From Phyllobates terribilis (lineage: Eukaryota), in contig NW_027362767.1 of NCBI RefSeq assembly GCF_046119375.1, positions 39,308,001 to 39,372,000 on the forward strand: a DNA stretch of 64,000 nt, in the 5' to 3' direction. The notes under the pieces are model-generated. The model did not search any database, was not told the DNA's origin, and saw nothing but the letters and a program-made list of their open reading frames with translations. A program made the position numbers and the translations under genes. Position 1 is the first letter of the stretch; every line of letters starts with the position of its first letter. Positions 10,469 to 64,000 of this stretch are shown one piece after another.

Positions 10469-10505
10469 AGAAGAATAGATAATCAGCTGGGAGATGAGCT
10501 GTGAT

Positions 10506-13500
10506 TAGTGTTGAGCGATACCTTCCGATATCAGGAAATATCGGATCGGATTGGATTGGGCCGATACTCAAAAAGTATCAGATATCGCCGATTCCGATAC
10601 CGGAAACCAATGCAAGTCAATGGGACAGAAATATCGGAATGAAAATAAACCCTTTCTTTCCTTGTAGGGTAATTCTACATGAAGGGAAAACAACTAACAA
10701 TAATGTAGAATGTATTGGGGGAGGTGGTTGCCCAAATCGATGGGAACAGTGCTCACAGTGAAATATGAAAAGCCGGCAATTCAGCAGCGGCATACACCGG
10801 TACCCGACAATTTAGAACAGAATGAATAGAGCACCAAACATAGATTAGATAGATAGAAACATGTCAGTCACATATATATGAAGTACAGGGACAGTGTTGA
10901 TCACTGTACTTGTCATTTAGTGTAAAGGATTTATTTAAAAAAAATAATAGTGTTTTCATGCACCGTCTCTTTAAAAAAGCCGTCCAGCAATTCAGCAGCG
11001 GCATACACCGGTACCCGACAATTTATAACAGAAAGAATAGAGCATCACACATAGATTAGATAGAAACATGTCAGTCACATATATAAGAAGTACAGTGATA
11101 GTGTTGATTACTGTACTTGTCATTTAGTGTTAAAATAAAGGATTTATAAAAAAAAAAAATTGGCGTGGGGCTCCCTGTAATTTTAGTCTCTAGCGGAGGT
11201 TAAGCAGACGGCTGGGGCAGATGTTTGAAGCCTGGGAAGGGGGTAATACCCACGGAGCTTCCAAGGCTACTAATATCAGACCCCAGCTGAATACCTAGCC
11301 TTTACTAGCTATTAAAATGGGGGACCCCCAAAAAAATGACTTGGGGTCCCCCCTATTTTAATAGCTAGCAAAGGCTAGGCAGACAGCTGGGGGCTGATAT
11401 TAATAGCCCAGGAAGGGTGCCATGAATATTGGCCCCCTACCAGGCTAGAAACACCGGCCGTCAGCCGCCCCAGAAATGGCGCATCCATAGGATGTGCCAA
11501 TTCTGGCACTTAGCCTCGCTCTTCCCACTGCCCTGTAGCGGTGGCAGGGGGTAATAGGGTTGGAGTTGATGTCAGCTTATAATGCCAGCTGACATCAAGC
11601 CCAGGTTAGTAATGAAGAGGCGTCTATAAGACACCCCATTACTAACCTCATAGTGAAAGTTAAAAAAAAACACAAACACCCAGAATAAAGTCCTTTAATT
11701 GAAATAAGCACACAATTCTTTATTGTTCTAAATTAAACCATACTTACCGTCACGCCCATTCCAGCTGAAGCCAACGATCTCCTGCAATAAAAGAAAAATA
11801 ATAAAGCAACATCATCCTTACCTTTCCATGGTTCCCACGACAGCTCCAGCTCTGCTACATTGAGATGACAGGCGGACCGCAGCAGAACGCTGCCATCCAG
11901 CTTGTCATCCCGCAGACACTGAGAAGCGCAGGCATGCTTGCGCTCCTCAGTGTCTGGCTGTGACGGCATCCAGATGAGCCGACAATGAACTCAGCTCACC
12001 TCATGCACGTCAGTGACAGCGTGGGAGAATTTTCCTGCGCATGCGGTGAGCGTGAGAGACTCAGCTCATCTGGATGCCGTCACAGGCAGACACTGAGGAG
12101 CGCAAGCATGCCTGCGCTTCTCAGTGTCTGCGGGATGACAGGCTGGATGGCAGCTTTCTGCTGTGGTCCAGCCTGTCATCTCGATGTAGCAGAGCTGGAG
12201 CTGTCCTGGGAACCATGGAAAGGTAAGGATGAGGTTGCTTTATTATTTTTCTTTTATTGCAGGAGATCGTTGGCTTCAGCTGGAATGGGTGTGATGGTGA
12301 GTATGGTTTAATTTAGAACAATAAAGAATTGTGTCTTTATTTCAATTAAAGGACTTTATTCTGGGTGTTGTGTTTTTTAAAAATACTTTACTAGAAATTC
12401 ATGGCGGTCATGTCTAATATTGGCGTGACCCCATGAATTTCGGGCTTAGGGTCAGCTGATAATACCAAGCTGGCCCTAACCCCTTTATTACCCAGTGAGC
12501 CACCGCACCAGGGCCCTGGATGAGTTGGGTACAGCGCCAGAAGATGGCGCTTCTATGAACGCACCATTTTCCGGGGTGGCTGCGGACTGCAATTTGCAGC
12601 GGGGGGGCCAGAAAGCTTGGGCCTCCCTGCGCTGCGGATTCCAGCCCCCAGCTGCCTAGTTGTACCTGGCTGGACACAAAAATATAGGGAAGCCCTTTTT
12701 TTCTTAATTATTTCATCCTATGGATGCGCCATTTCTGGGGCGGCTGACGGCTGGTGTTTCTAGCCTGGGAGGGGGCCAATATTCATGGCACCCTTCCTGG
12801 GCTATTAATATCAGCCCCCAGCTGTCTGCCTAGCCTTTGCTGGCTATTAAAATAGGGGGGACCCCACGTCATTTTTTTGGGGGTCCCCCATTTTAATAGC
12901 TAGTAAAGGCTAGGTATTCAGCTGGGGGCTGATATTAGTAGCCTGGGAAGCTCCGTGGGTATTACCCCCTTCCCAGGCTTCAAGCATCTGCCCCAGCCGT
13001 CTGCTTAACCTCCGCTAGAGACTAAAATTACGGGGAACCCCACGCCAATTTTTTTTTTAATAAATCCTTTATTTTAACACTAAATGACAAGTACAGCAAT
13101 CAACACTATCACTGTACTTCTTATATATGTGACTGACATGTTTCTATCTATCTAATCTATGTGTGATGCTCTATCTTTCTGTTCTAAATTGTCGGGTACC
13201 GCTGATGAATTGCCGGCCGGCTTTTTTAAAGAGTCGGTGCATGAAAACGCTATTATTTTTTTAAATAAATCCTTTACACTAAATGACAAGTACAGTAACC
13301 AACACTGTCACTGTACTTCTTATATATGTGACTGACATGTTTCTATCTATCTAAGCTATGTGTGATGCTCTATTCTTTTTGTTCTAAATTGTCAGGTACC
13401 GGTATTTGCCGCTGATGAATTGCCGGCTTTTCATGTTTCACTGTGAGCACTGTTCCCATCGATTTGGGCAACCACTGTAATGCCACAGCCACCATGGTTG

Positions 13501-13801
13501 TGGCATTAACGTCTTAAAAAAATATTGATTCCTGCTATTCCATTTAATTGTAATGTAAGGGAGATAATGTAATGTCAGCACTTGAGCAGGAGAATTCTCC
13601 CACGCTGGGATGGCATTCTGATGACAGGCTGGATCGCAGCTGAGCGCTGCCATCCAGCTTGTCATCCTTCAGAGACACTGCAGAGTGCAGGCATTATGGG
13701 AACTTCCGATTCCGGTATTCAATATTGTAAAAGTATCGGAACTCCGATACCGCGAATATCGGTCGATACCCGATATTTCAGTATCGGAATGCTCAACACT
13801 A
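10506..13801. mobile_element. Non-autonomous hAT-type DNA transposon, copy 1 (3296 bp), with a palindromic interior
   Basis: 11-bp TIRs TAGTGTTGAGC / GCTCAACACTA and a perfect 8-bp TSD GCTGTGAT (10498-10505, 13802-13809). Subterminal CCGATA/TATCGG motifs are clustered at both ends. No transposase ORF. The TAG start and 8-bp TSD are hAT hallmarks. Confidence 0.9.
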
Positions 13802-15930: not shown

Positions 15931-15935
15931 TTATA

Positions 15936-16194: not shown

Positions 16195-16251
16195 AATTCT
16201 CATTTATGGGAGCAGTCTCTGACTCACCCTGTTTCACTCTCTGGGTGACAC

Positions 16252-16382: not shown

Positions 16383-16384
16383 CA

Positions 16385-26500: not shown

Positions 26501-26620
26501 GTGCAGCACTGGAGTATAATACAGGATGTAACTCAGGATCAGTACAGGATCAGTAATGTAATGTATGTACATAGTGACTGCACCAGCAGAATAGTGAGTG
26601 CAGCTCTGGAGGATAATACA
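20529..26620 (+). repeat. 86-bp satellite array with a 1072-bp higher-order repeat
   Basis: Same unit as 4315-7915. Diagnostic variants recur at exactly 1072 bp (track ORF starts 23775/24847/25919 and 23334/24406/25478). An 11-bp TACAGGATCAG insertion marks some monomers. Confidence 0.96.
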
Positions 26621-39400: not shown

Positions 39401-39635
39401 ACTGCTCCTCTGTATAAGAATATAACTACTATAATATTGCTCCTCTCTACAAGAATATAACTACTATAATACTGCTCCTATATACAAGAATATAACTACT
39501 ATAATACTACCTCCTATGTACAAGAATATAACTACTATAATACTGCCCCCTATGTACAAGAATATAACTACTATAATACTGCTCCCTATGTACATGAATA
39601 TTATAGTAGTTATATTCTTATACGTGGGAGTAGAA
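36425..39635 (-). repeat. 35-bp satellite array in reverse orientation, ending in one inverted unit
   Basis: Unit CTATGTACAAGAATATAACTACTATAATACTGC(T/C)C is the reverse complement of the 1-3421 unit. One forward unit lies at ~39600-39635. Confidence 0.96.
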
Positions 39636-40649
39636 TTACAGTATTATCTCCTGCCCCCATGTACAGCAGATTTGTGGTGCAGTATTTTCCTACTAGTTGA
39701 CAGCAAGCAAACATCCTGAAATAGGTGAAGGACTGCAGGATGTTGGTCAGATGGTTGCAGTGATCTGTGCTGACATCTTTTATCAGAGCCGCCATCCTGC
39801 AGTTTTTCCTGACTGCGGACAGTCTGAATATTCCCTATAACATGTCTCGCCGCTGGAGGTTCTTTGCTCTCATGGATGAATAGATCTTTTCACCAGGACA
39901 CGAGGCCTCGGATGACTTGCGTATTTATTGTCTACCTTGCAGCTCTGGGAGAGGACAAGCAAAAGTTGCTAATTATATTTCATCCTATGTAACATTTCTC
40001 AGGGATTTGAAGAGTTAACTTCTTGGTTGAAAAAAAGTGATCTGACACACCCCCTGATATTACACCCACCTGGTGAAAACTGCCCTGCCCTTACCTCTCC
40101 ATTATACAGGAAAGACAGGTTATCTGCTGACTGCGGCATTCAGATGAAGAGCGCCGCCTAGAGGCCGCAAGTACACAGGGCAAGTGCTATCTGCGTCCCA
40201 TGGGTTTGTTCATGGAGGGGCTAGGACAGCACTATGGCTGTGAATTGGGGTCCTTTATCATCCGCTGTCTCAAAAGTTTGGGCAAGAAATATTTTTTTTC
40301 TATACGTTAGTGTAGCTGCTGATCCCGGGGGTCCCAGCTCTTTGTGTATTAGATCATGGACATTATAGGGGGTCCCCTGCTCTTCACATAATCACCTATT
40401 TATTTGAATGGACACCTGGATATTAATAATGGGGATCCTTAAAGTCTAGAAGTTTGGACTATTTCTTTAATTACACTTGTCATTTCACCCAAGAGCAACG
40501 CAGAGTAATGACCCTGCTGTACACATCACCTACAAGATAAAACGGCTCCACTCTTTTTGAAGAGGTGTTTTTTCTTCTTCGGGATTCTGTCAGTACTGTA
40601 GGTGCTGGAAATCACTTTCCCTCACTTTCCAGCATGAATTCAAAATAGA

Positions 40650-42610: not shown

Positions 42611-45457
42611 TGATCCTTCTCTGCTGCCATTGACGGATTACACTTGACCACACTCTAGACACAAAGTTACATAGAAGGAAAACATATTTCTTGGCTCTGA
42701 TTTCCCAGAATGAACGAGCTAGTTTAGGTAAAATAAGGATTTTGCAAATCTGTAGGGCATCGCCATCATGACCCCAAGATTACAGCGACCATTTAAAGCC
42801 TGAGCCTTTCCTTATGAGCCCCCATTCTGCCTTATAGCGTCTTCCTGTGCCGGTTTCTGCAGTCCCGTTCTTGGATCTTAGGGTTCACTCTTTGTGGTCT
42901 TATATCGACATCTATGCAGCATTACTCTTTAGAGGTGGAGAGCTAGTCCTGGAAATGCTCACATAGACCCCCCCCCCCCCCCTATAAAAATCAGCAGCCG
43001 CCAAAGAAGGGGCCACTTATCTGATAACTACAGAAAATGATGAAACTTCTCCTGCAGCGCCTGGAGATAAGCAACTGTAAAAATCTGAAAACTGCTTCAA
43101 TCTGCCCCCTAGAGGCACAAACCTGCATCGCACTTCCATAATGTGACCCAGTTACTGGGAAAAAGGAGACAGAGGCAGGTGATTTATAAGGCGGTTCTCC
43201 TACAATGTGACTGCTGTGACAGATGGAAACTCGTTCATGTAGTAGCATTGTTCACCTCAAAAGTGTTCACACTAAAGGGATGCACTATTCAGAGAACCTC
43301 ACCTAAGGCGGCACTGTTACGTTACAGGATGAGGCATCCCAAATATCCCTATATTACACTTACTGTCATCCAGGCTTCCTTGTAGTTCAAACCTATAAAG
43401 TGCTATGTAATGTGTTAAACGGTCCCCCATGCTTTACCCTGCAGCTTTTCTTATTTAGATTTTCATGGTAAAATGTGCAGAATGATAGACATATGTTTCC
43501 CTGCTGGTGTTATCTGCCTGTGTATGGCCACCCTCAGGGTAATCAGATAATGCCCTGGCCTCCCTCCCTTTCTTCCTCTGCATGCCTTCTGTCTGAAATC
43601 TGACTCCTTCTCTGCTGCAGCAGATGCTTCCTTCCTGCTGTGTCAGCCTCTTTATTCTGCCACTCCTTCCTGCTGATAGTCTCCTTCCATCTCAACCTTC
43701 CACCTGTTGCCTTCTGTGGCACAGTAATGAGCCCTGGGGCTAGTGATGCCTCCGACTACGGGTCCAAGATCAGTATAGGAGAAAGTTCTGAACTTCCTAA
43801 TATATTTTGCACTTCCATTCCTCACCATTTGTAATATCTCTGCTTGCTGTCAGTGAATCATGATTTTTTTTATTGACACCCAAAGGCTAAAAAACCTTTA
43901 TGTTTCTCATAGCAGAAGAGTTACTTTATATCCAGTCTAGAAAATCCGTGGTATCCAGTCTAGACGAGAAGTACCGCAATCTGGCGCGCCATTTTTACTG
44001 TCAAGACCCTGAAAAAAAAACGGACGAACCTCTGTAAAGTCAATGGTGAGATCCATCAAGATCTATTTGTATCTGTAAGCCGGCAGTGATACACTGTAAC
44101 AAACCTTCAGGCCAGGAGAAAGGTTCAGGATAGATCTGACCAGATACAATTGTAGCAGTGAGATCCATTAGGTCTGTACAGATTGTCAGCCTCTCAATTC
44201 ACTGACAGCAAGCAGAGATTCTGAAAACCGATCTAGTTATCTAGAATAAAACTGCTTGAAATGTTGCAAAATTTTGGGCAGCTCATATTTTTTACTTTTT
44301 TACGCCAGTTCAGAAAAACTTTTTGAAAAGCCCTAGCACGCCCGACAAATTCATTATAATGGTCCGAATTAGGACAGAAATAGAAGCGGTTTTGGCAGAT
44401 TTTACTCCAGCAGAACGCCAGTCGTAAGGAATCGGATCCTTATTGTTTTGTTGCGCAGCGTAACCTGTAAGAACAGAGACTCGCATGTCCCGTGGTCGCG
44501 CGTGTGTGGACGTGGCGGCGTCACAGACGATCGCTTGGCCTGGATGTGATGCAGTAATGCAGCGTTTGCTCCCCCATTGCTGATCTCATTACAATCCGCT
44601 CGCTCGCAGCCAAGAGCGAGAGCAGCCACATAAGCTGAACGAGCTCATAGGACGGAGCCGGATCTCCTGTATCCATAGAAATCCACATCCGCGTATAAAA
44701 ACCCTCCTGATATATAATGATTGGTAACCCAGATCGGAGCTGTCAGTAAAACGGCAGAAGACTGATAGCCTAGAGCTCTGCTCAGCCTGAGCCTCCTATT
44801 TCATGAGTACAATTATAGAGCTGCAGTGAAGACTGACAGCCAGAGCAATAAGAGGGAATAAGTAGGATGCAATTCTGCATAGCTGTTCTAATATTGGGAT
44901 CCCGGCACCAAAATTTCCCTTGATGTTGTCTCTTGTATACCAGAATGTTTCCATTCACTGACAGCAAGCAGAGATCCTGAACCTGGTACTAGATTGAAAC
45001 AAAAAGTAGTGAATATTAAAAATGTATATCTTTGTTCATCCTGAGCCTCCTGGTTCACAGGTTGTTACTTCACAGCCTCTGCCGCCCTTATGGTGGAGCA
45101 GATGAGAGCGTAGAACCGTTAGATTCCAAAATTTTCCGGAATGCGCTGTAACTTTTTAGGGTCACCAGAGGTCACCGCTCATTTCCCATTATCCGCCCCA
45201 TTGCATCTGGAGTGCGGAGCTCGGGATCATTATAAAAGTCGCCTTCGCCATGGCGAACAGTCTGTGTCAGTATACTAAAAAAAGCCATCACGCCTCGCCA
45301 TTTCCATGGTTACCAGCGCCGCTTCCTGCCATTTCTTCGTAAGATTAAATAACAGGCAATTAAGGCGCGGATCAATTTAGACGGCTCCCTGGACGCGTTT
45401 TGGATATTTTTATCTGGAATTCCTTGGAGTCAATGAGAGACACAAACCCAGATTTAA

Positions 45458-45990: not shown

Positions 45991-47259
45991 CAGGGGCATA
46001 ACGATCGCAGTCGCAGAGGGTGCAACCCAACCAGGCTTGTGCGGGAGGGGAACCAGCCGACGCATATTTCACTTGGATGTGCATCCGAGGACATCCGAGG
46101 TCCCTGCACTGCAATACACGCTGCCAGCCAATCAGACGCCGGCTGCTGACGTCGGCTTGCAAGTCACTAGCGGCACATGGCAGTGATGGCATGCGCTGCC
46201 CATTACTTGCACGCTGAAGTCAGCTGCCGGCTTCTGCGTCAGCAACAGAAGAGGACGCCGCATGTCATAAGCAGCAGAACAGGGGACATATATACCAGGA
46301 TGGGGGACGTATATACCAGGATGGGGGACATATATACCAGGATGGGGGACATATATACCAGGATGGGGGATATATATACCAGGATGGGGGATATATATAC
46401 CAGGATGGGGGACGTGTATACCAGGATGGGGGACGTGTATACCAGGATGGGGGACGTGTATACCAGGATGGGGGACGTATATTCCAGGATGGGAGACGTA
46501 TATACCAGCATGGGGGACGTATATACCAGGATGGGGGACGTATATACCAGGATGGGGGACGTATATACCAGGATGGGGGATGTATATTCCAGGATGGGGG
46601 ATGTATATTCCAGGATGAGGGATGTATATTGCAGGATGAGGGACGTATATTCCAGGATGGGGGACGTATATTCCAGGATGGGAGACGTGTATATACCTGG
46701 ATGGGGGATGTATATACCAGGATGGGGGATGTATATACCAGGATGGGGGACGTATATACCAGGGTGGGGGATGTATATACCAGGGTGGGGGATGTATATA
46801 CCAGGATGGGGGACGTATATACCAGGATGGGGGACGTATATACCAGGATGGGGGACGTGTATACCAGGATGGGGGACGTGTATACCAGGATGGGGGACGT
46901 GTATACCAGGATGGGGGACGTATATTCCAGGATGGGGGACGTATATTCCAGGATGGGAGACGTATATTCCAGGATGGGAGACGTGTATATACCAGGATGT
47001 GGGATGTATATACCAGGATGGGGGACGTATATACCAGGATGGGGGACTATATACCAGGATGGGAGACGTATATACCAGGATGGGGCACATGTATACCAGG
47101 ATGGCGTACATTAGTACAGGATGGGGGAGTGGAGGCAACACGTAGGTCTTTATAGGATTTAGAACGCTACAGGGGCCCATATATCTGACCAACATGGGGT
47201 GGATGGGGGGCAGGTAAACATTTTGCAGCGGGGCTCATCAGATTCTCGTTATGCCACTG
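45991..47259. mobile_element. hAT-type MITE carrying an internal 21-bp minisatellite
   Basis: 14-bp TIRs CAGGGGCATAACGA / TCGTTATGCCACTG (one mismatch). The flanking 8-mers ACTGCAGC and CCTACAGT match at 5/8, so the TSD is aged. Confidence 0.7.
46281..47105 (+). repeat. 21-bp G-rich minisatellite (TATACCAGGATGGGGGACGTA)
   Basis: About 39 tandem copies. A period of 21 gives long stop-free frames (MGDVYTR / YIPGWGT repeats). Confidence 0.95.
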
Positions 47260-47998: not shown

Positions 47999-49627
47999 CA
48001 GTACAGACCAAAAGTTTGGACACACCTTCTCATTTAAAGATTTTTCTGTATTTTCATGACTATGAAAATTGTACATTCACACTGAAGGCATCAAAACTAT
48101 GAATTAACACATGTGGAATTATATACTTAACAAAAAAGTGTGAAACAACTGAAAATATGTCTTATATTCTAGGTTCTTCAAAGTAGCCACCTTTTGCTTT
48201 GATGACTGCTTTGCACACTCTTGGCATTCTCTTGATGAGCTTCAAGAGGTAGTCACCGGAAATGGTTTTCACTTCACAGGTGTGCCCTGTCAGGTTTAAT
48301 AAGTGGGATTTCTTGCCTTATAAATGGGGTTGGGACCATCAGTTGTGTTGTGCAGAAGTCAGGGGGATACACAGCTGATAGTCCTACTGAATAGATTGTT
48401 AGAATTTGTATTATGGCAAGAAAAAAGCAGCTAAGTAAAGAAAAACGAGTGGCCATCATTACTTTAAAAAATGAAGGTCAGTCAGTGCGAAAAATTGGGA
48501 AAACTTTGAAAGTGTCCCCAAGTGCAGTTGCAAAAACCATCAAACGCTACAAAGAAACTGGCTCACATGAGGACCGCCCCAGGAAAGGAAGACCAAGAGT
48601 CACCTCTGCTTCTGAGGATAAGTTTATCCGAGTCACCAGCCTCAGAAATCGCAGGTTAACAGTAGCTCAGATTAGAGACCAGGTCAATGCCACACAGAGT
48701 TCTAGCAGCAGACACATCTCTACAACAACTGTTAAGAGGAGACTTTGTGCAGCAGGCCTTCATGGTAAAATAGCTGCTAGGAAACCACTGCTAAGGACAG
48801 GCAACAAGCAGAAGAGACTTGTTTGGGCTAAAGAACACAAGGAATGGACATTAGACCAGTGGAAATCTGTGCTTTGCTCTGATGAGTCCAAATTTGAGAT
48901 CTTTGGTTCCAACCACCGTGTCTTTGTGCGACGCAGAAAAGGTGAACGGATGGACTCTACATGCCTGATTCCCACCGTGAAGCATGGAGGAGAAGGTGTG
49001 ATGGTGTGGGGGTGATTTGCTGGTGACACTGTTGGGCATTTATTCAAAATTGAAGGCATACTGAACCAGCATGGCTACCACAGCATCTTGCAGCGGCATG
49101 CTATTCCATCCGATTTGCGTTTAGTTGAACCATCATTTATTTTTCAACGGGACAATGACCCCAAACACACCTCCAGGCTGTGTAAGGGCTATTTGACCAA
49201 GAAGGAGAGTGATGGGGGGCTACGCCAGATGACCTGGCCTCCACAGTCACCAGACCTGAACCCAATCGAGATGGTTTGGGGTGAGCTGGACCGCAGAGTG
49301 AAGGCAAAAGGGCCAACAAGTGCTAAGCATCTCTGGGAACTCCTTCAAGATTGTTGGAAGACCATTTCCGGTGACTACGTCTTGAAGCTCATCAAGAGAA
49401 GCCAAGAGTGTGCAAAGCTGTCATCAAAGCAAAAGGTGGCTACTTTGAAGAACCTAGAACATAAGACATATTTTAAATTGTTTCACACTTTTTTGTTAAG
49501 TATATAATTCCACATGTGGTAATTCATAGTTTTGATGCCTTCAGTGTGAATGTACAATTTTCATAGTCATGAAAATACAGAAAAATCTTTAAATGAGAAG
49601 GTGTGTCCAAACTTTTGGTCTGTACTG
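47999..49627 (+). mobile_element. Full-length Tc1/mariner DD38E (Intruder-type) transposon, 1629 bp, inactive
   Basis: TA TSD (47997-98, 49628-29). TIRs CAGTACAGACCAAAAGTTTGGACAC... extend about 268 bp (to ~48266 and from ~49361). Confidence 0.95.
48413..49464 (+). pseudogene. DD38E transposase pseudogene
   Basis: MARKKQLSKEKR...GRPR...CSDESK...KHGG..VMVWG*FAG...DNDPKH...SPDLNPIE, with 38 codons between GAC and GAG. Defects: in-frame TGA at 49013-15 (both track ORFs are in the same frame) and an apparent 1-bp deletion near 49400. The inferred original stop is TAA at 49462-64. Confidence 0.92.
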
Positions 49628-50160: not shown

Positions 50161-51735
50161 ATGAAGACCAAGGAACACACCAGGCAGGTCCGAGATACTG
50201 TTGTGGCGAAGTTCAAAGCTGAATTTGTTTTACAATAATTTTTTTTATTTTGAAAAAACAAACACTTAACAGGGAATGCAACGTTTACACTAGTTGAGTA
50301 TACGTAAATGATTAAAAGGTTAAACGGAAGAAGGTGGAAGGGGACTGGGAAGGAATAGGGAAGGAATGGGAAAGAATGGGGAAGGATGGGAACACTCAAT
50401 AGAGTGAACAAGGAAAATGGGAAGAATTGAGTCGTCAAATGGTAGGGTATTTTAAGTATAAAGTATAGAGGATAAACCAGAATCAATAGTTATCTGAATC
50501 AACCTAAGTTAATAACAATAGTGATAATTACAACATCTTTTTGACTAGAGATCGTACACACTAGGTAAATGTTAGAACTACATGCATCTTATGGTTATCA
50601 ATCCTATGGAGTACAGGGAAACTTAGTGGTCCAAATATCCCATTTCATTGAAAATCTATGTAAGTTATTGTTGATAATTGCGAATCTATGTTCGTAAACT
50701 TTGTGATGATTCATTTTGTCAACCAGCTCCTCCACCGCGGGGACAAGCGGACCCCTCCAATTAAAAGCCCAAAGCTGAATTTGGATACAAAAAGATTTCC
50801 CAAGTTTTAAACATCTCAAGGAGCACTGTGCAAGCGATCATATTGAAATGGACGGAGTATCAGACCACTGCAAATCTCCCAAGACCCGGCCGTCCCTCTA
50901 AACTTTCATCTCGAACAAGAAGAAGACTGATCAGAGATGCAGCCAAAAGGCCCATGATCACTCTGGATGAACTGCAGAGATCTACAGCTGAGGTGGGAGA
51001 GTCTGTCCATAGGACAACAATCAGTCGTACACTGCACAAATCTGGCCTTAATGGAAGAGTGGCAAGAAGAAAGCGATTTCTCAAAGATATCCATAAAAAG
51101 TCTTGTTTGAAGTTTGCCACCAGCCACCTGGGAGACACACCAAACATGTGGAATAAGGTGCTCTGGTCAGATGAAACCAAAATCAAACTTTTTGCCACAA
51201 TGCAAAACGATATGTTTGGCGTAAAAGCAACACAACTCATCACCCTCAAAACACCATCGCCACTGTCAAACATGGTGGTGGCAGCATCATGGTTTGGGCC
51301 TGCTTTCCTTCAGCAGGGACAGGTAAGATGGTTAAAATTGATGGGAAGATGGACGGAGTCAAATACAGGACCATTCTGGAAGAAAACCTGTTGGAGTCTG
51401 CAAAAGACCTGAGACTGGGACGGAGATTTATCTTCCAACAAGACAATGATCCCAAACATAAAGCAAAATCTACAATGGAATGGTTCAAAAATAAACGTAT
51501 CCAGGTGTTAGAATGGCCAAGTCAAAGTCCAGACCTGAATCCAATCGAGAATCTGTGGAAAGAGCTGAAAACTGCTGTTCACAAACGCCCTCCATCCAAC
51601 CTCAATGAGCTCGAGCTGTTTTGCAAGGAAGAATGGGCAAGAATTTCAGCCTCTCGATGTGCAAAACTGATAGAGACATACCCCAAGCGACTTGCAGCTG
51701 TAATCGCAGCAAAAGGTGGCGCTACAAAGTATTAA
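50161..51735 (+). pseudogene. Passport-like transposase pseudogene
   Basis: ATG at 50161. The frame is broken by the insertion after KFKAEF and resumes in frame as GYKKISQ. Frameshift near 51195; WSDETK, DNDPKH-34-E and stop TAA at 51733-35. Confidence 0.92.
50228..50769 (-). mobile_element. 5'-truncated L1-clade retrotransposon (542 bp) with a 14-bp TSD
   Basis: TSD CAAAGCTGAATTTG at 50214-27 and 50770-83. The minus-strand peptide AFNWRGPLVPAVEELVDKMNHHKVYEHRFAIINNNLHRFSMKWDIW resembles an L1 ORF2 C-terminus. It is followed by a 3' UTR and an A-rich tail with AATAAA. Confidence 0.82.
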
Positions 51736-54505: not shown

Positions 54506-55408
54506 ATGGGATCAATGGTGATTCAAAGTGGTTCTGTTCACTGAAAGCAAGCCGGGATCTCTACAATAGTGAAGTATATTGGCTTTATAGACCCCCTTGG
54601 TGCAGGGCTCAGTCATTGCATGTGACAGTCCCTGGAGATGGCTCTTGAGGCGGCGATCACTCATCATCCACAGCAGCCATGTGAGCTGACACAATGAGCT
54701 GATTCTGCACTGCAGAGCATCTCCCTCAATGAGGCGCAGACATTGCAGCTCGTGCTCACTGAGTCAATCATTGCATCAGCTGCAATACTGCCCTGCACAG
54801 GACACAAATCTCCTCGCACAGGAGGCGTCCCCCCGAGAAACCGTCTCCGGGGGCTCCGCGTGATGAAATAAAAGTCGATTTCTCCAGAAACCACACGATG
54901 GAGGCGATGCTTCAGTTTAACCCTCTATTAAACGCTCTTAAAGGGCCCTTAGTTTATAAAAAAAAAATCATTGGCGTAACCACCAACGTCTCTAGACCCC
55001 TGAATGGCAAATGAGCACAGACAGGCAGTAACATATGTCCCGGCGATCGATATCACTGCATAATTAAACACATAGGGGAGTTAGGGGTTAATTTCCAGAA
55101 TTCTTACAGATGAGAATGTAAGACATGCTGAGAGTTGTAGTTTCACAAAATCTGGGGTCACAGTATACAGATCAGTCACTTGGATAATAAAGAGTTAACA
55201 CCACGACTCCTATTAACCTACACCTAGCACTGTAGTGAAGACACATCAATGCCCCCCCTGAGGCACAGGCGGCTACTTCACTAGTGGTCTCACTGTTACC
55301 ATAGAGATGAAATCCATAAGAATGTCACCACCACCAAAAACCATTCAACAGGAAGAGAAATAACATACAGACCCCAAAAGAAACAAAATATAAAAGATTA
55401 CAAAATAA

Positions 55409-58400
55409 TAGTGTTGAGCGATACCTTCCGATATCAGGAAATATCGTATCGGATTGGATCGGGCCGATACCCAAAAAGTATCGGATATCGCCGATTCCGA
55501 TACCGGAAACCAATGCAAGTCAATGGGACACAAATATCGGAATGAAAATAAACCCTTTCTTTCCTTGTAGGTTAATTCTACATGAAGTAAAACAACTAAG
55601 AATAATGTAGAATGACATGAAAAGCCGGCAATTCATCAGCGGCATTCACCGGTACCCGACAATTTACAACAGAAAGAATAGAGCTTCACACATAGATTAG
55701 ATAGATAGAAACATGTCAGTCACATATATATGAAGTACAGTGACAGTGTTGCTTACTGTACTTGTCATTTAGTGTAAAGGATTTATTAAAAAAAATATTA
55801 GTGTTTTCATGCACCGTCTCTTTAAAAAAGCCGGCCGGCAATTCAGCATCTGTACCCGACAATTTATAACAGACAGAATAGAGCTTCACACATAGATTAG
55901 ATAGATAGAAACATGTCAGTCACATATATATGAAGTACAGTGACAGTGTTGCTTACAGAACTTGTCATTTAGTGTAAAGGATTTATTTAAAAAAATAATA
56001 GTGTTTTCATGCACCGTCTCTTTAAGAAAGCCGGCCGGCAATTCAGCATCTGTACCCGACAATTTAGAATAGAAGGAATAGAGAATCACACATAGATTAG
56101 ATAGATAGAAACATGTCAGTCACATATATATGAAGTACAGTGACAGTGTTGATTACTGTACTTGTCATTTAGTGTTAAAATAAAGGATTTATTTAAAAAA
56201 AAATTGGCGTGGGGTTCCCCTTAATTTTAGGCTCTAGCGGAGGTTAAGCAGACAGCTGGGGCAAATGTTTGAAGCCTGGGAAGGGGGTAATACCCACGGA
56301 GCTTCCCAGGCTACTAATATCAGCCCCCAGCTGAATACCTAGCCTTTACTAGCTATTAAAATGGGGGACCCCCCAAAAAAAATGACGTGGGGTCCCCCCT
56401 AATTTAATAGCTAGCACAGGCTAGGCAGACAGCTGGGGGCTGATATTAATAGCCCAGGAAGGGTGCCATGAATATTGGCCCCCTCCCAGGCTAGAAACAC
56501 CAGCCGTCAGCCGCCCCAGAAATGGCGCATCCATAGGATGCGCCAATTCTGGCACTTAGCCTCGCTCTTCCACGCTGCCCTGGTGCGGTGGCAGGGGGTA
56601 ATAGGGTTGGGGTTGATGTCAGCTTATAATGCCAGCTGACATCAAGCCCAGGTTAGTAATGGAGAGGCGTCTATAAGACACCCCCATTACTAACCCCATA
56701 GTCAAAGTTAAAAGAAAACACAAACACCCAGAGTAAAGTCCTTTAATTGAAATAAAGACACAATTCTTTATTGTTCTAAATTAAACCATACTTACCATCA
56801 CGCCCATTCCAGCTGAAGCCAACGATCTCCTGCAATAAAAGAAAAATAATAAAGCAACCTCATCCTTACCTTTCGATGGTTCCCAGGACAGCTCCAGCTC
56901 TGCTACATCGAGATGACAGGCTGGACCGCAGCAGAAAGCTGCCATCCAGCCTGTCATCCCGCAGACACTGAGAAGCGCAGGCATGCTTGCGCTCCTCAGT
57001 GTCTCTCTGTGACGTCATCCAGATGAGCCGAGTTCATGTCCAATGAACTCAGCTCACCTCATGCACGTCACTGACAGCGTGGGAAAATTCTCCTGCACTC
57101 AGCGCTTCAGCGTGAGAATTCTCCCACGCTGTCAGTGACATACATGAGGTGAGGTCATGTCCAATGAACTCAGCTCACCTCATGCACGTCACTGACAGCG
57201 TGGGAAAATTCTCACGCTGAAGTGCTGAGTGCAGGAGAATTTTCCCACGCTGTCAGTGACGTACATGAAGTGAGCGGAGTTCATTGGACATGACCTCGGC
57301 TCATCTGGATGCCGTCACAGCCAGACACTGAGGAGTGGAAGTATGCCTGCGCTTCTCAGTGTCTGCGGGATGACAGGATGGATGGCAGCGTTCTGCTGCG
57401 GTCCAGCCTGTCATCTCGATGTAGCAGAGCTGAAGCTGTCGTGGGAGCCATGGAAAGGTAAGGATGAGGTTGCTTTATTATTTTACTTTTATTGCAGGAG
57501 ATCGTTGGCTTCAGCTGGAATGGGCGGGGTGGTAAGTATGGTTTAATTTAGAACAATAAAGAATTGTGTGTTTATTTCAATTAAAGGACTTTTTTCTTGG
57601 TGTTTGTGTTTTTTTAAATACTTTACTAGAAATTCATGGTGGTCATGTCTAATATTGGCGTGACCCCATGAATTTTGGGCTTAGGGCCAGCTGATAATGC
57701 CAAGCTGGCCTTAACCCCTTTATTACCCAGTGAGCCACCGCACCAGGGACCTGGATGAGTTGGGTACAGCGCCAGAAGATGGCGCTTCTATGAACGCGCC
57801 ATTTTCTGGGGCGGCTGCGGACTGCAATTTGCAGCGGGGGTGGCCCAGAAAGCTTGGGTCTCCCTGCGCTGCGGATTCCAGCCCCCAGCTGCCTAGTTGT
57901 ATCTGGCTGGGCACAAAAATAGGGCGAAGCCCCACGCATTTTTTTTTTAAATTATTTCATGAAATTCATGGAATAATTAAGAAAAAAAGGGCTTCCCTAT
58001 ATTGTTGTGTCCAACCAGGTACAAATAGGCAGCTGGTGGTTGGGGGCAGCCCATTCCTGCCTGCTGTACCTGGCTGGACACAAATATAGGGCGAAGCCCC
58101 ACGTCAATTTTTTTTTAATTATTTCATGAAATAATTTTTTTAAAAAAGGGCTTCCCTATATTGTTGTGTCCGGCCAGGTACAAATAGGCAGCTGGTGGTT
58201 GGGGGCAGCCTGTTCCTGCCTGCTGTACCTGGCTGGACACAAATATAGGGCGAAGCCCAACGTCAATTTTTTTTAAAATAAGTCCTTTATTTTAACACTA
58301 AATGACATTTGAGGAGTTAATAAAGATGCAGTCCCTAAATTATTATTTATTTTTTAATTAATTTTTCCCAACACTTTTGACGTGGGCTTCGCCATATTTT

Positions 58401-61400
58401 TGTATGCCAGCCAGGTACAGCATCCAGCTTCTATGAACGCGCCATTTTCCGGGGTGGCTGCGGACTGCAATTTTCAGCGGGGGGAGAGAGGGGGGCAGAA
58501 AGCTTGGGCCTCCCTGCGCTGCAGATTCCAGCCCCCAGCTGCCTAGTTGTACCTGGCTGGACACAAAAATAGGGCGAAGCCCCACGTCTTTTTTTTTTTA
58601 AATTATTTCATGAAATAATTTAAAAAAAAAGGGCTTCCCTATATTGTTGTGTCCGGCCAGGTACAAATAGGCAGCTGGTGGTTGGGGGCAGCCCGTTCCT
58701 GCCTGCTGTACCTGGCTGGACACAAATATAGTGCGAAGCCCCACGTCAATTTTTTTTAAATCATTTCAGGAAATTCATGAAATAATTTAAAAAAATTGAT
58801 GTGGGGCTTCGCCCTATATTTGTGTCCAGTCAGGTACAGCAGGCAGGAACGGGCTGCCCCCAACCACCAGCTGCCTATTTGTACCTGGTTGGACACAACA
58901 ATATAGGGAAGCCCTTTTTTTCTTAATTATTTCATGAATTTCATGAATTTAAAAAAAAAAAACGTGGAGCTTCGCCCTATTTTTGTGTCCAGCCAGGTAC
59001 AACTAGGCAGCTGGGGGCTGGAATCTGCAGCGCAGGGAGGCCCAAGCTTTCTGGGCCCCACCCGCTGCAAATTGCAGTCCGCAGCCGCCCCGGAAAATGG
59101 CGCGTTCATAGAAGCGCCATCTTCTGGCGCTGTACCCAACTCATCCAGGGCCCTGATGCGGTGGCTCACTGGGTAATAAAGGGGTTAAGGCCAGCTTGGC
59201 ATTATCAGCTGGCCCTAAGCCCGAAATTCATGGGGTCACGCCAATATTAGACATGACCACCATGAATTTCTAGTAAAGTATTTAAAAAAAACACAAACAC
59301 CCTGAAAAAAGTCCTTTAATTGAAATAAACACACAATTCTTTATTGTTCTAAATTAAACCATACTTACCATCACGCCCATTCCAGCTGAAGCCAACGATC
59401 TCCTGCAATAAAAGAAAAATAATAAAGCAACCTCATCCTTACCTTTCCATGGCTCCCACGACGGCTCCAGCTCTGCTACATCGAGATGACAGGCTGGACC
59501 GCAGCAGAACGCTGCCATCCAGCCTGTCATCCCGCAGACACTGAGAAGCGCAGGCATACTTCCACTCCTCAGTGTCTGGCTGTGACGGCATCCAGATGAG
59601 CCGACAATGAACTCGGCTCACCTCATGTACGTCACTGACAGCGTGGGAGAATTCTCCTGCACTCAGCGCTTCAGCGTGAGAATTTTCCCACGCTGTCAGT
59701 GACGTGCATGAGGTGAGGTCATGTCCAATGAACTCGGCGCACCTCATGCACGTCACTGACAGCGTGGGAGAATTCTCACGCTGAAGCGCTGAGTGCAGGA
59801 GAATTTTCCCACGCTGTCAGTGACGTGCATGAGGTGAGCTGAGTTCATTGGACATGACCTCGGCTCATCTGGATGACGTCACAGAGAGACACTGAGGAGC
59901 GCAAGCATGCCTGCGCTTCTCAGTGTCCGCGGGATGACAGGCTGGATGGCAGCGTTCTGCTGCGGTCCAGCCTGTCATCTCGATGTAGCAGAGCTGAAGC
60001 TGTCCTGGGAACCATGGAAAGGTAAGGATGAGGTTGCTTTATTATTTTACTTTTATTGCAGGAGATCGTTGGCTTCAGCTGGAATGGGCGTGGCGGTAAG
60101 TATGGTTTAATTTAGAACAATAAAGAATTGTGTCTTTATTTCAATTAAAGGACTTTTTTCTGGGTGTTTGTGTTTTTTTTAAATACTTTACTAGAAATTC
60201 ATGGCGGTCATGTCTAATATTGGCGTGATCCCATGAATTTCGGGCTTAGGGCCAGCTGATAATGCCAAGCTGGCCTTAACCCATTTATTACCCAGTGAGC
60301 CACCGCACCAGGGCCCTGGATGAGTTGGGTACAGCGCCAGAAGATGGCGCTTCTATGAACGCGCCATTTTCCGGGGCGGCTGCGGACTGCAATTTGCAGC
60401 GGGTGGGGCCCAGAAAGCTTGGGTCTCCCTGCGCTGCAGATTCCAGCCCCCAGCTGCCTAGTTGTACCTGGCTGGACACAAAAATAGGGCGAAGCCCCAC
60501 ATAATTTTTTTTTAATTATTTCATGAATTTCCTGAAATAATTAAAAAAAAATTGACGTGGGGCTTCACACTATATTTGTGTCCAGTCAGGTACAGCAGGC
60601 AGGAACGGGCTGCCCCCAACCACCAGCTGCCTATTTGTACCTAGCCGAACACAACAATATAGGGAAGCCCTTTTTTTCTTAATTATTCCATGAATTTCAT
60701 GAAATAATTAAAAAAAAAAAACGTGGAGCTTCTCCCTATTTTTGTGTCCAGCCAGGTACAACTAGGCAGCTGGGGGATGGAATCTGCAGCGCAGGGAGGC
60801 CCAAGCTTTCTGCCCTCCCCCCCCGCTGAAAATTGCAGTCCGCGGCCGCCCCGGAAAATGGCGCGTTCATAGAAGCTGGATGATGTACCTGGCTGGCATA
60901 CAAAAATATGGCGATGCCCACGTCAAAAGTTTTGGGAAAAATTTATTAAAAAATAAATAACAATTTAGGGACTGCATCTTTATTAAGTCCTCAAATGTCA
61001 TTTAGTGTTAAAATAAAGGATTTATTTAAAAAAAAAATGGCGTGGGATCCCCCATAATTTTAGTCTCTAGCGGAGGTTAAGCAGACGGCTGGGGCAGATG
61101 TTTGAAGCCTGGGAAGTGGGTAAAACCCACGGAGCTTCCCAGGCTACTAATATCAGCCCCCAGCTGAATACCTAGCCTTTACTAGCTATTAAAATGGGGG
61201 ACCCCCCCCAAAAAAATGACGTGGGGTCCCCTCTATTTTAATAGCTAGCAAAGGCTAGGCAGACAGCTGGGGGCTGATATTAATAGCTCAGGAAGGGTGC
61301 CATGAATATTGGCCCCCTCCCAGGCTAGAAACACCAGCCGTCAGCCGCCCCAGAAATGGCGCATCCATAGGATGCGCCAATTCTGGCACTTAGCCTCGCT

Positions 61401-63092
61401 CTTCCACGCTGCCCTGGTGCGGTGGCAGGGGGTAATAGTGGTGGGGTTCATGTCAGCGCCAGCTGCCATGAAGCCCAGGTTAGTAATGATGGCCGTCTAT
61501 ATGACACCCCCATTACTAACCTACAAAGTGTTAAAAAGAAAAAACACACTACACCCAGAAAAAAATAATTTATTTGAAATAAAACACCATTTTATTTAAT
61601 TCTTAGTTTACTAAAAAAAAAATAGTTACCTGTCCACGTTCCTGCGCTGATCTCCCATGCACAGCTGTCACATCTGGAGATGGTGACAGCTGTGCATGGC
61701 TGCTGTAAGCTCACGCTGCCGGGAACACGTCCGCTCCCGGCAGCGGGAGCCACTGACTGAGGTCACCGGAGTGCATTCAGGCAGCGCAGCTCCGGAGACC
61801 TCCTTTACGGCAGTGCTGTACCGTGGGAATTTCTCACGATACAGCAGTGCCGTAAAGGAGCTAACTGGAGCAGCGCTGCCTGAACTCCGGTGAACCCTTA
61901 CGGCCCCGTCATTCTAGCGGCGGCAGCGGTTCAGAGCGGTCACATTCTATGTGGCTGCTCTGAACTGGAGATCTTCGTGGGACACTCGTGGACTACTACA
62001 GAGGGGTAAGGATAAGGTTGTGGTTTATTATTTTATATTTTATTACAGGAGATCGATGGCTTCGGGGAATTAGGTGTCTTGGTGAGTATAGGTGTAGTTT
62101 TTTATTTTTTACTTTATTTTAGGTGGCGATCGGCGGGGACAGGTAATGTATGAACTAATTTCTTTTAGGTAACCACTGGCCACCAATGACATGTATTTAA
62201 CATTTATTGGGGACACAGTAGGGCAATTTAAATAGCAGGATCAGGCTGATGGGAACTACTGCTCCCATCGAGCTGATCCTGCTGGCAGGAGTGGACGGGG
62301 GACAGACATAGGCCGATGGGAGTAGTAGTGTCACATCGGCCTATGTCTGCCCGCACACACACCCGCACACACACCCGCACACACACACCCCGCACACACA
62401 CCCGCACACACACCCCGCACACACACCCCGCACACACACACACCCCGCACACACTAATCATGACGGGTCCGGGAGGTGAGGCTGACCTGTGCGGCCGTGG
62501 GAAAGTTGATGTGAGTTCATGCAGTCAAGCATGAACTCACATGAACCCTCTGAGGGCACCGCGGCTACTTCAAATGAACAGCTGATCGGCATCACCTGAT
62601 ACCTCAGCTGTTCATTTGAAATAACCGGCGGGAAAGCGCAGCACAGAACGGGAAAGCCGGCGGTGAAGTCTTTTCACTGCCGGCTTCCCCGCCCGGGTCC
62701 TTCGCTCCTTGGTGCTGCGCTCCCCGCCCGGTCCTAATTTACGATCGGGATGGGAGGTGGCGAGGGGAGCGGAGGATCGGGGTGGGAGGCTGCGGGGAAG
62801 CAGTATGGGGCTGCGTGATTGTTTAAAAGCCGGCGGCTTTTTACCGCGCCGGCTTTTAAACAATCAGGAGAATTCTCCCACGCTGGGATGGCATTCTGAT
62901 GACAAGCTGGATCGCAGCTGAGCGCTGCCATCCAGCTTGTCATCCTTCAGAGACACTGCAGAGCGCAGGCATTATGGGAACTTCCGATTCCGGTATTCGA
63001 TATTATAAAAGTATCGGAATTAAGTATCGGAATTCCGATACAGTGAATATCGGCCGATACCCGATATTTCAGTATCGGAATGCTCAACACTA
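55409..63092. mobile_element. Non-autonomous hAT-type DNA transposon, copy 2 (7684 bp), with a nested-palindrome interior
   Basis: Same 11-bp TIRs and about 200 bp of each end shared with 10506-13801. Perfect 8-bp TSD CAAAATAA (55401-08, 63093-100). No transposase ORF. Confidence 0.9.
62351..62452 (+). repeat. CCCG(CA)n compound microsatellite inside hAT copy 2
   Basis: Repeated CCCGCACACAC(AC) units. Confidence 0.9.
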
Positions 63093-63184
63093 CAAAATAA
63101 TAATCTGTATAATAAACAAGAGAGATGATACAAAGTAACAAACCTCAGACATCCAACACATCCCTCATTCACCTACATACAAGT

Positions 63185-64000
63185 GTTATAGTAGTTATAT
63201 TCTTGTACAGAGGAGCAGTATTATAGTAGTTATATTCTTGTACATAGGGGCAGTATTATAGTAGTTATATTCTTGTACATAGGAGCAGTATTATAGTAGT
63301 TATATTCTTGTATATAGGAGCAGTATTATAGTAGTTATATTCTTGTACATAGGGGCAGTATTATAGTAGTTATATTCTTGTACATAGGAGCAGTATTATA
63401 GTAGTTATATTCTTGTATATAGGAGCAGTATTATAGTAGTTATATTCTTGTACATAGGGGGCAGTATTATAGTAGTTATATTCTTGTATATAGGAGCAGT
63501 ATTATAGTAGTTATATTCTTGTACAGAGGAGCAGTATTATAGTAGTTATATTCTTGTATATAGGAGCAGTATTATAGTAGTTATATTCTTGTACATAGGG
63601 GGCAGTATTATAGTAGTTATATTCTTGTACATAGGAGCAATATTATAGTAGTTATATTCTTGTACATAGGAGCAGTATTATAGTAGTTATATTCTTGTAT
63701 ATAGGAGCAGTATTATAGTAGTTATATTCTTGTACAGAGGAGCAGTATTATAGTAGTTATATTCTTGTATATAGGAGCAGTATTATAGTAGTTATATTCT
63801 TGTAGAGAGGAGCAATATTATGGTAGTTATATTCTTGTACAGAGGAGCAGTATTATAGTAGTTATATTCTTGTACATAGGAGCAGTATTATAGTAGTTAT
63901 ATTCTTGTATATATGAGCAGTATTATAGTAGTTATATTCTTGTACATAGGAGCAATATTATAGTAGTTATATTCTTGTACATAAGGGGCAGTATTATAGT
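63185..64000 (+). repeat. 35-bp satellite array (runs off the window end)
   Basis: Same unit and orientation as 1-3421. Confidence 0.97.

What the first reader, a model, noticed from the sequence alone, without database searches (positions are those of the whole stretch)
55409..63092. Foldback-like hAT family, copy 2: same ends, 2.3x longer, interior re-assembled from the same modules
Seen: the ends match copy 1 and there is a different perfect 8-bp TSD. The interior has three 200-bp tandem units; a palindrome centred ~57170; a ~2.8-kb imperfect palindrome (~58270-61030, centre ~59730) with sub-palindromes centred ~58770 and ~60530; a second direct copy of the 56205-56700 block at ~61035; and a ~1.3-kb segment (61560-62860) absent from copy 1. 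Motifs from the right end (GAGAATTCTCCCACGCTG, GATGACARGCTGGAT...ATCCAGCYTGTCATC) are reused in the internal modules. Inference: a transposon family whose members diversify by iterative fold-back/template-switch duplication of their own parts while keeping mobilisable ends, analogous to Foldback elements but with hAT termini. This is the best candidate here for an undescribed system.
Basis: partly seen in the sequence, partly recalled or inferred. Interest (0 to 1): 0.7.

Follow-up and report, generated by a model that had tools for sequence, protein, structure and literature searches.

The report
Frog hAT transposon packed with palindromes
This is a real but protein-less cut-and-paste (hAT-type) jumping gene of a frog genome whose 7.2-kb inside is built from forward and backward copies of its own hairpin-forming pieces; it is a striking variant of known transposon behaviour, not a new kind of system.

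Summary
Window 55409-63092 (7684 bp) and 10506-13801 (3296 bp) share the same 11-bp inverted ends (TAGTGTTGAGC). Their roughly 210-bp end regions are 96% identical and rich in TATCGG. Each copy has its own perfect 8-bp target duplication. Neither copy encodes a protein.

The tandem units, the palindromes, the second direct block and the extra 1.3-kb segment are all present, with small corrections to coordinates. No internal ends or internal target duplications exist, so nested insertion of same-family elements is excluded.

Repeat identities fall into tiers: about 75%, 80-88% and 93-97%. This argues for several rounds of duplication. Three rearrangement junctions lie in 3-24 nt of shared sequence, and one carries 7 nt of filler. 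That pattern fits repair or replication errors better than transposase action.

A simple iterative fold-back model is incomplete. The arms are chimeras of diverged subfamilies, and much of the pattern equals tandem duplication of palindromic units.

Only short contigs were available as read data. They show that every module is multi-copy in several individuals, but they cannot validate the long-range order at this locus.

The closest known cases are maize Ds elements, the Galileo transposon and the internal repeats of Tol2. The scan has noted nested-palindrome hAT elements at many other places in this genome. I rate it a new variant of a known kind, of moderate interest.

The parts
55401..55408 (.). 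left target-site duplication CAAAATAA of copy 2
   Evidence: read directly; identical to 63093-63100
55409..55623 (+). left end L: 11-bp terminal inverted repeat TAGTGTTGAGC (55409-55419) plus a subterminal region with 6 TATCGG/CCGATA hexamers
   Evidence: 95.7% identical to copy 1 at 10506-10714
55624..56205 (+). three tandem T units of about 200 bp
   Evidence: TRF: period 200, 2.6 copies, 95%; unit identities 93-95%
56205..56375 (.). U hairpin: two half-units of about 85 bp in opposite orientation, homologous to the start of the M arm
   Evidence: self-BLAST 56197-56285 vs 56375-56463 at 76%, and 56266-56499 palindromic at 76%; arms I9
56375..57946 (.). palindrome Qa, 1.57 kb, centre about 57163. 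The left outer arm is M-type and the right outer arm is N-type. The inner arms carry a chain of short hairpins and an intron-like piece. The centre is a 121-bp unit present 2.1 times.
   Evidence: inner arms 93.4%, outer arms 67-75%
57947..58262 (.). W array: units of 159-167 bp, each a GC-rich hairpin plus an AT-rich hairpin
   Evidence: TRF: 57889-58279, period 159, 2.4 copies, 88%
58263..61040 (.). 2.8-kb imperfect palindrome, centre about 59730. It contains palindrome Qb (58949-60515, both arms N-type). Junction J1 lies at its left edge (58258-58268). Junction J2 (58427) is mirrored at about 60877. The left arm has one more W unit than the right.
   Evidence: fold z = -69 for 59270-60190
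60996..61596 (+). second direct copy of the block 56163-56772 (end of T, then U, then M arm). It is 96.5% identical up to 61374 and about 82% beyond.
61597..62864 (+). segment X, missing from copy 1: a chain of at least 10 short hairpins, a CA-rich microsatellite (62350-62454), and one 96-bp paralogue of the intron-like piece (62005-62100)
   Evidence: multi-copy in other individuals' contigs
62865..63092 (+). right end R. It holds GAGAATTCTCCCACGCTG, the GATGACARGCTGGAT hairpin and a CAGAGACACTG piece (paralogues of the Q inner arm), then 7 TATCGG hexamers and the 11-bp inverted repeat (63082-63092).
   Evidence: 96.3% identical to copy 1 at 13587-13801
63093..63100 (.). right target-site duplication CAAAATAA of copy 2
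   Evidence: contigs of three runs match from 63091 rightwards and break there, as an empty site would
10506..13801 (+). copy 1 of the same family (3296 bp), with target duplication GCTGTGAT at 10498-10505 and 13802-13809. Outer palindrome 10724-11494 / 12714-13475 (94%); inner palindrome 11665-12378 (90%), with a central deletion relative to the Q centres of copy 2.

Best explanation
Copy 2 is a non-autonomous, non-coding member of a high-copy hAT-type cut-and-paste transposon family of a frog genome. It is presumably moved in trans by a transposase that recognises the 11-bp inverted ends and the TATCGG hexamers packed into the roughly 135 bp next to each end.

Its cargo is not foreign DNA. 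It is a mosaic of a small vocabulary of hairpin-forming modules that are paralogues of one another and of the element's own right subterminal region. The modules are a half-unit of about 85 bp (forms U, M, N and W), a chain of short hairpins with an intron-like piece (the inner arms), and a 200-bp unit (T).

The mosaic grew in several rounds by four processes:
1. Inverted duplication centred on pre-existing short hairpins.
2. Tandem duplication of units that are themselves palindromes.
3. Exchange between diverged subfamilies.
4. Deletions at palindrome centres.

The most likely setting is error-prone, template-switching repair of the double-strand gap left by excision, or replication stalling at the hairpins. 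The ends stayed intact, so rearranged forms remained mobile.

What is shown: the ends, the target duplications, the module relationships, the identity tiers, the junction positions, the absence of internal ends, and the multi-copy status of all modules.

What is inferred: the repair or replication process, the order of events, trans-mobilisation, and whether the private rearrangements of copy 2 arose before or after its insertion.
For: Ends and mobility:
- Both copies have identical 11-bp ends and different perfect 8-bp target duplications.
- The end regions are 95.7% and 96.3% identical between copies.
- 23 of the window's 26 TATCGG sites lie in the four subterminal zones.
- No ORF reaches 120 aa in copy 2, and no hAT transposase is present in the window.

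Origin of the cargo:
- The interior modules hit only the two copies within the 64-kb window.
- Right-end motifs recur 10 to 14 times inside.
- R at 62898-62972 is 82-84% identical to the inner arms.

Several rounds of duplication:
- Half-units are about 75% identical.
- W units and the 121-bp centre are 80-88% identical.
- Inner arms, N arms and UM blocks are 93-97.6% identical.

Junctions:
- J1 is a switch inside a roughly 24-nt homeologous tract, CCCACGYCAA followed by a T-run.
- J2 has 8 nt of homology (GGTACAGC) plus 7 nt of filler, and is present on both arms.
- The copy 1 junction at 12714 shares CAT.

Palindrome geometry: the palindromes have asymmetric spacers of 12-26 nt that coincide with loops of short hairpins.

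Reads:
- Contigs of three DNA runs from two studies cover every part of 57300-63299 as multi-copy sequence.
- One 82-nt contig bridges J2.
- One joint (59660 to 62864, with a 13-nt loop) shows a simpler family form in which the arm runs straight into R.
- Other copies end exactly at 63092.

Literature: Ds and Galileo show the same kind of behaviour (PMC3260210, PMC4168063).
Against: - Only two copies could be compared, so the event order is unresolved. Informative sites among the N arms conflict 5/2/7.
- No transposase partner was seen, so the hAT assignment rests on the ends and target duplications alone.
- Only k-mer contigs of about 80-400 nt were available, so the long-range order of copy 2 is not validated by single molecules.
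- The oldest hairpin unit is flanked by A-runs and T-runs that create TTAA on both sides. An ancient insertion of a TTAA-targeting miniature element, as for Angel in Tol2, cannot be excluded for that layer.
- The window is very rich in satellites, so some private duplications of copy 2 may be local, post-insertion events rather than a family property.
Confidence: 0.72

Rival explanations
1. Nested insertions. The interior was built by independent miniature inverted-repeat elements inserting into a simple hAT element and into each other, in the way the Angel element gave Tol2 its internal inverted repeats.
For: The Tol2 precedent: 302/303-bp internal inverted repeats flanked by TTAA, absent from the lamprey relative (10.64898/2026.01.12.699174). 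The W hairpins lie between A-runs and T-runs that form TTAA on both sides.
Against: - There are no internal copies of the family's ends.
- The flanks of Q and of the W hairpins are mirror images (an A-run against a T-run), not direct repeats.
- The modules are paralogues of the element's own right end.
- No module occurs outside the two copies in about 53 kb of other sequence in the window.
- The rearrangement junctions lie in shared homology or carry filler, not target duplications.
Confidence: 0.1
2. Local post-insertion rearrangement. A simpler element, like copy 1 or smaller, inserted here and was then expanded in place by replication slippage and fold-back in a satellite-rich, rearrangement-prone region. 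On this view the 7.7-kb form never transposed.
For: - The window is full of satellite arrays, and copy 2 sits 90 bp from a 35-bp satellite.
- The three N arms of copy 2 are closer to each other (95.6-96.6%) than to the arm of copy 1 (93-94%), with only 4-10 private changes each.
- Most other copies continue canonically at 60996 and 58427, as shown by loose ends in three runs.
Against: - The Q palindrome, the T array and the UM blocks are shared by both insertions, so they predate them.
- Segment X is multi-copy in other individuals.
- A contig bridging J2 exists in another individual's run.
- The scan's unchecked notes list elements of about 5.5 to 7.9 kb, described as hAT-ended nested palindromes, at other loci.
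Confidence: 0.13
3. Assembly or long-read fold-back artefact. The palindromes are chimeric reads or mis-joined repeats.
For: Fold-back artefacts are known in long-read data (PMC12870357, listed). The long-range order of copy 2 could not be checked on raw reads.
Against: - The arms differ by 3-12%, have asymmetric spacers of 12-26 nt and carry unequal numbers of W units. An artefact would give identical arms.
- The same architecture occurs at two loci of the window.
- All parts are present in contigs from several individuals of two studies.
- There are no N runs in the element.
Confidence: 0.05

Closest known systems
Maize Ds elements (Ds2 and Ds-like classes) of the Ac/Ds hAT family
   Same: 11-bp terminal inverted repeats. 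8-bp target duplications. Subterminal regions of about 200 bp packed with a hexamer (AAACGG there, TATCGG here). No transposase. Interiors that vary greatly among copies and are attributed to faulty repair with filler DNA (PMC3260210).
   Different: Ds filler is mostly unrelated or gene-derived DNA. Here the filler is the element's own hairpin modules, copied forwards and backwards into kilobase palindromes. The autonomous partner has not been identified here.
Galileo (with Kepler and Newton), foldback-like members of the P superfamily in Drosophila
   Same: A cut-and-paste family whose non-autonomous copies can be almost nothing but long inverted arms, for example a 9-kb copy with arms of 4.2 and 4.7 kb. 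It shows 'dynamic restructuring' by expansion of tandem repeats and recruitment of internal sequence into the arms. This is explained by abortive repair, slippage, template switching and ectopic exchange (PMC4168063).
   Different: In Galileo the long arms are the terminal inverted repeats themselves and reach the ends. Here the terminal repeats are 11 bp, the L and R regions are unlike each other beyond that, and the palindromes are internal cargo, nested at several scales. The superfamily also differs (P against hAT-type ends).
Tol2 internal inverted repeats
   Same: A vertebrate hAT element carrying an internal palindrome (302/303-bp arms) that forms hairpins in PCR.
   Different: The Tol2 repeats are a single pair, ascribed to insertion of the Angel miniature element with TTAA duplications. 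That preprint calls them unique among hAT elements. Here there are many nested palindromes without insertion signatures.
Drosophila Foldback (FB) elements
   Same: Fold-back DNA as the bulk of a mobile element, with arms that contain internal repeats and vary in length among copies (my own knowledge, not tested here).
   Different: FB arms run to the termini, are made of short tandem repeats, and give 9-bp duplications (my own knowledge). Here the ends are short and hAT-like, and the duplications are 8 bp.

Membership tests
hAT superfamily (non-autonomous member) | 8-bp target-site duplication | tested here: met
   Perfect 8/8 in both copies, with different sequences: CAAAATAA and GCTGTGAT.
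hAT superfamily (non-autonomous member) | short terminal inverted repeats (about 10-25 bp) beginning YARNG | tested here: met
   The 11-bp TAGTGTTGAGC is present at all four ends and nowhere else in the window. TAGTG fits YARNG; that consensus comes from my own knowledge.
hAT superfamily (non-autonomous member) | subterminal clusters of a short transposase-binding motif | tested here: met
   5 to 7 TATCGG/CCGATA sites lie within about 135 bp of each end, accounting for 23 of 26 window hits. Binding itself was not tested.
hAT superfamily (non-autonomous member) | mobilising transposase with a BED finger and a hAT dimerisation domain | not testable with these tools
   No such ORF is present in the element or the window. 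A scan note (s1-196816) claims a transposase-bearing partner elsewhere; this is unchecked.
hAT superfamily (non-autonomous member) | weak target consensus nTnnnnAn | tested here: inconclusive
   Each duplication fits one of the two fixed positions on either strand. Two sites are too few to judge.
Foldback (FB) elements | long inverted arms that reach the element's termini | tested here: not met
   L and R align only over the 11-bp ends and scattered hexamers. The palindromes start more than 200 bp inside the element.
Foldback (FB) elements | 9-bp target-site duplication | tested here: not met
   The duplications are 8 bp in both copies.
Composite or double element (double-Ds type) | extra internal copies of the transposon ends | tested here: not met
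   No internal match to the 11-mer, even allowing one mismatch.
Rfam microRNA families | score at or above the family's gathering threshold | tested here: not met
   54 hits to many unrelated miRNA models on both strands, all far below threshold. The best was 79.9 bits against a threshold of 200. These are generic matches to hairpin shape.

The most novel reading that the evidence does not exclude
The family may be intrinsically palindrome-generating. Its right-end leader is a chain of short hairpins, and these could act as fold-back priming sites each time the excision gap is repaired, so that transposition itself would drive growth of the cargo. The resulting kilobase palindromes cover what looks like the 5' leader of the parent transposase gene. 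If transcribed, they would yield double-stranded RNA against that leader. That would be a self-made brake comparable to the maize Mu killer locus.
Probability: 0.1. Interest if true: 0.65.

Novelty: new variant of a known kind. Interest (0 to 1): 0.35.

Why it matters
Long, closely spaced inverted repeats are normally unstable in vertebrate genomes. This family appears to carry, reshuffle and spread kilobase palindromes in very high copy number within a giant frog genome. That gives a natural series of variants for three questions: how palindromes arise at short hairpins, how they are tolerated or trimmed (copy 1 shows a central deletion), and how non-autonomous transposons diversify while keeping working ends. 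It also matters practically, because such elements are traps for assembly, read mapping and repeat annotation. It does not reveal a new transposition mechanism.

Tried and rejected
- Nested same-family insertion (double-Ds type): rejected, because there are no internal ends.
- A clean order of duplication from an arm phylogeny: failed. The UM blocks are star-like at 95.5-97.6%, and the N-arm informative sites conflict 5/2/7.
- Segment X as a diverged full palindrome: rejected. Its left edge aligned against the reverse complement of the intron-like region scores no better than shuffles (26, against a shuffle maximum of 31).
- Known RNA families: only sub-threshold, shape-only miRNA hits.
- An autonomous partner in the window: none. 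Only Tc1/mariner remnants were found.
- More copies from public collections: a metagenome scan with the 27-nt left end was blank. No eukaryotic genome collection is on hand. The scan's sequence look-up was blank.
- Validation on raw reads: not possible, because all 24 runs are kept as short k-mer contigs. Their depths are not copy numbers and were not used to rank modules.
- A run guessed to be RNA (X10) lays relatively more contigs on the inner arms and on 61900-62300 than the DNA runs do. Its RNA status is only a guess, so expression is not claimed.
- Literature search for hAT elements with nested kilobase palindromes in frogs or Xenopus: nothing specific found.
Full report
**Observation**

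The stretch 55409-63092 begins TAGTGTTGAGC and ends GCTCAACACTA. It is flanked by CAAAATAA on both sides, at 55401-55408 and 63093-63100. A second element at 10506-13801 has the same ends and is flanked by GCTGTGAT at 10498-10505 and 13802-13809. The 11-mer, even with one mismatch allowed, occurs only at these four ends in the 64-kb window.

The roughly 210-bp end regions of the two copies are 95.7% (left) and 96.3% (right) identical. The hexamer TATCGG/CCGATA occurs 26 times in the window. Of these, 23 lie within about 135 bp of the four ends, while shuffles give 13 +/- 3.7 for the whole window. Copy 2 has no ORF of 120 aa or more. The window contains Tc1/mariner remnants but no hAT transposase.

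- The 200-bp array, 2.6 copies at 95%.
- The palindrome centred at 57163.
- The 2.8-kb palindrome, about 58262 to 61040, centred near 59730.
- Sub-palindromes, with several rather than one on the right side.
- The second direct copy of 56163-56772 at 60996-61596, 91%.
- A segment of about 1.3 kb that copy 1 lacks, apart from two short paralogous stretches.
- The reuse of right-end motifs inside the element.

As single-stranded DNA, 59270-60190 folds at -534.7 kcal/mol, against -121.7 +/- 6 for shuffles.

**Anatomy of copy 2**

Reading left to right:
- L, 55409-55623.
- Three T units, to 56205.
- U hairpin, to 56375.
- Palindrome Qa, 56375-57946.
- W array, to about 58262.
- The large palindrome, 58263-61040, holding palindrome Qb at 58949-60515.
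- A second block of T-end, U and M, 60996-61596.
- Segment X, 61597-62864.
- R, 62865-63092.

Copy 1 is itself a palindrome. Its outer arms are 10724-11494 and 12714-13475 (94%), and its inner arms span 11665-12378 (90%). Its centre lacks roughly 200 bp that the Q centres of copy 2 have.

The modules are related to each other:
- U, M, N and W all derive from a half-unit of about 85 bp that starts ACGTGGGG and alternates in orientation.
- The inner arms are a chain of short hairpins followed by an intron-like piece.
- The first 110 bp of R are an 82-84% paralogue of that chain.

No interior module hits anything else in the window.

**What the interior is not**

There are no internal copies of the ends, so this is not one element inserted into another. 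The flanks of Q and of the W hairpins are mirror images (an A-run against a T-run), not direct repeats.

The three rearrangement junctions I could define lie in shared sequence:
- J1, at 58258-58268, is a switch inside a roughly 24-nt homeologous tract, CCCACGYCAA followed by a T-run.
- J2, at 58427, has 8 nt of homology (GGTACAGC) and 7 nt of filler. It is present on both arms of the large palindrome, so it predates that palindrome.
- The copy 1 junction at 12714 shares CAT.

This is the signature of repair or replication errors, not of a transposase.

An assembly or fold-back read artefact is unlikely. The arms differ by 3-12%, have asymmetric spacers of 12-26 nt, and the two arms of the large palindrome differ by one W unit.

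**History**

Identities fall into tiers:
- Half-units, about 75%.
- The outer arms of Qa (M against N), 67-75%.
- W units and the 121-bp centre, 80-88%.
- Inner arms, the four N arms and the four UM blocks, 93-97.6%.

But a plain series of fold-backs does not fit everything:
- Qa is 93% symmetric inside and only 67-75% outside, so its arms come from different subfamilies.
- The second UM block is 96.5% identical to the first up to 61374 and about 82% beyond, grading into X.
- Informative sites among the N arms support all three groupings, 5/2/7.
- An alternating array is also what a tandem duplication of a palindromic unit produces.

I read the cargo as the product of inverted duplication at short hairpins, tandem duplication, exchange between family members, and central deletion.

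**Reads**

All public runs that hold the stretch are kept as short k-mer contigs. Laid on 57300-63299, three DNA runs from two studies cover every bin with tens of thousands of contigs, so all modules, X included, are multi-copy in several individuals.

Useful details:
- Contigs of three runs match 63091-63209/10 perfectly and break exactly at 63091. An unoccupied site would do this, because the left flank ends in TA before the duplication.
- Other contigs end at 63092 and continue into different flanks. These are other insertions of the family.
- An 82-nt contig bridges J2.
- At 60996 and 58427 most other copies continue canonically.
- One joint links 59660 to 62864 through a 13-nt loop that resembles the central loop of copy 1. 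This points to a simpler family form in which the arm runs directly into R, so that the first 18 nt of R are the right stem of the central hairpin.

The long-range order of copy 2 could not be validated. Depths were not used as copy numbers.

**Mechanism**

Shown: a non-coding element with conserved ends that inserted at least twice, and a cargo made of its own modules with repair-type junctions.

Inferred: mobilisation in trans by a hAT transposase binding the ends and the TATCGG clusters, and diversification during template-switching repair of excision gaps or replication stalling at hairpins. Whether the private junctions of copy 2 arose before or after insertion is open.

**Comparison**

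- The architecture of the ends matches maize Ds elements: 11-bp ends, hexamer-rich subterminal regions of about 200 bp, and variable filler (PMC3260210).
- The structural dynamism matches Galileo of the P superfamily, where copies can consist of two arms of more than 4 kb, and where repeat expansion and recruitment of internal sequence into the arms are ascribed to abortive repair, slippage, template switching and ectopic exchange (PMC4168063).
- Tol2 is a vertebrate hAT element with internal inverted repeats, ascribed to an inserted Angel element.
- This element is not a Foldback element: its arms do not reach the ends, and its duplications are 8 bp.
- The poison-frog genome papers I could search report hAT abundance but describe nothing like this family.
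- I found no paper on nested kilobase palindromes as hAT cargo.

**Earlier notes of this scan**

By their titles and summaries, several earlier notes describe hAT-ended nested-palindrome elements of about 5.5 to 7.9 kb at other loci of this genome, which the notes call a poison-frog-type genome. They reach the same verdict. I could not see those sequences, so they are leads, not support. Copy 1 of this window was checked here.

**Verdict**

This is a new variant of a known kind, of moderate interest.

Noticed in passing
window 1-3421, 36418-39601, 63182-64000: A 35-bp satellite (with higher-order periods of 71 and 177 bp) forms three arrays, the middle one in reverse orientation. Copy 2 of the hAT element sits only 90 bp from the third array, and contig depth there is 10-20 times that of the element.
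   Followed up: partly
window 4315-7915 and 20522-26620: An 86-bp satellite. At about 5170-5179 the array switches to the reverse-complement orientation, giving an inversion junction inside a satellite.
   Followed up: no
window 15194-19002, 34661-35572, 40648-42611, 46282-47128: Further satellites of 29, 49, 30 and 21 bp. The long ORFs over them give only spurious repeat-type Pfam hits, for example TPR on 46177-47145.
   Followed up: partly
window 30228-30845, 48413-49015, 50828-51735: Tc1/mariner transposase remnants (DDE_3, HTH_Tnp_Tc3_2). No hAT transposase is present anywhere in the window.
   Followed up: partly
window 62001-62175; paralogues at about 57457-57549 and 60021-60113 (+), 56778-56870 and 59351-59443 (-), 11730-11840 (-), 12222-12314 (+): The 'micro-intron chain' that the scan noted separately is a module of this transposon family, present in every Q arm, half of the time in antisense. 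The first GT...AG interval is only about 40 nt, very short for a vertebrate intron. In the Q arms it is preceded by a Kozak-like CCATGG. It may be a relic of the parent transposase gene's 5' leader.
   Followed up: partly
window 57300-63299, run X10: In a run guessed to be RNA, contigs lie relatively more on the inner arms and centre (59300-60100) and on 61900-62300 than on the N/W parts, by a larger factor than in the DNA runs. Its RNA status is unverified, so this is only a lead for expression.
   Followed up: no
window 33244-33673: A run of 430 N (assembly gap or mask).
   Followed up: no
window 10715-10770 and 13437-13586: Copy 1 carries about 50 bp after its left end, mirrored at 13437-13475, and about 110 bp of unique sequence before its right end. 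Copy 2 lacks both.
   Followed up: no
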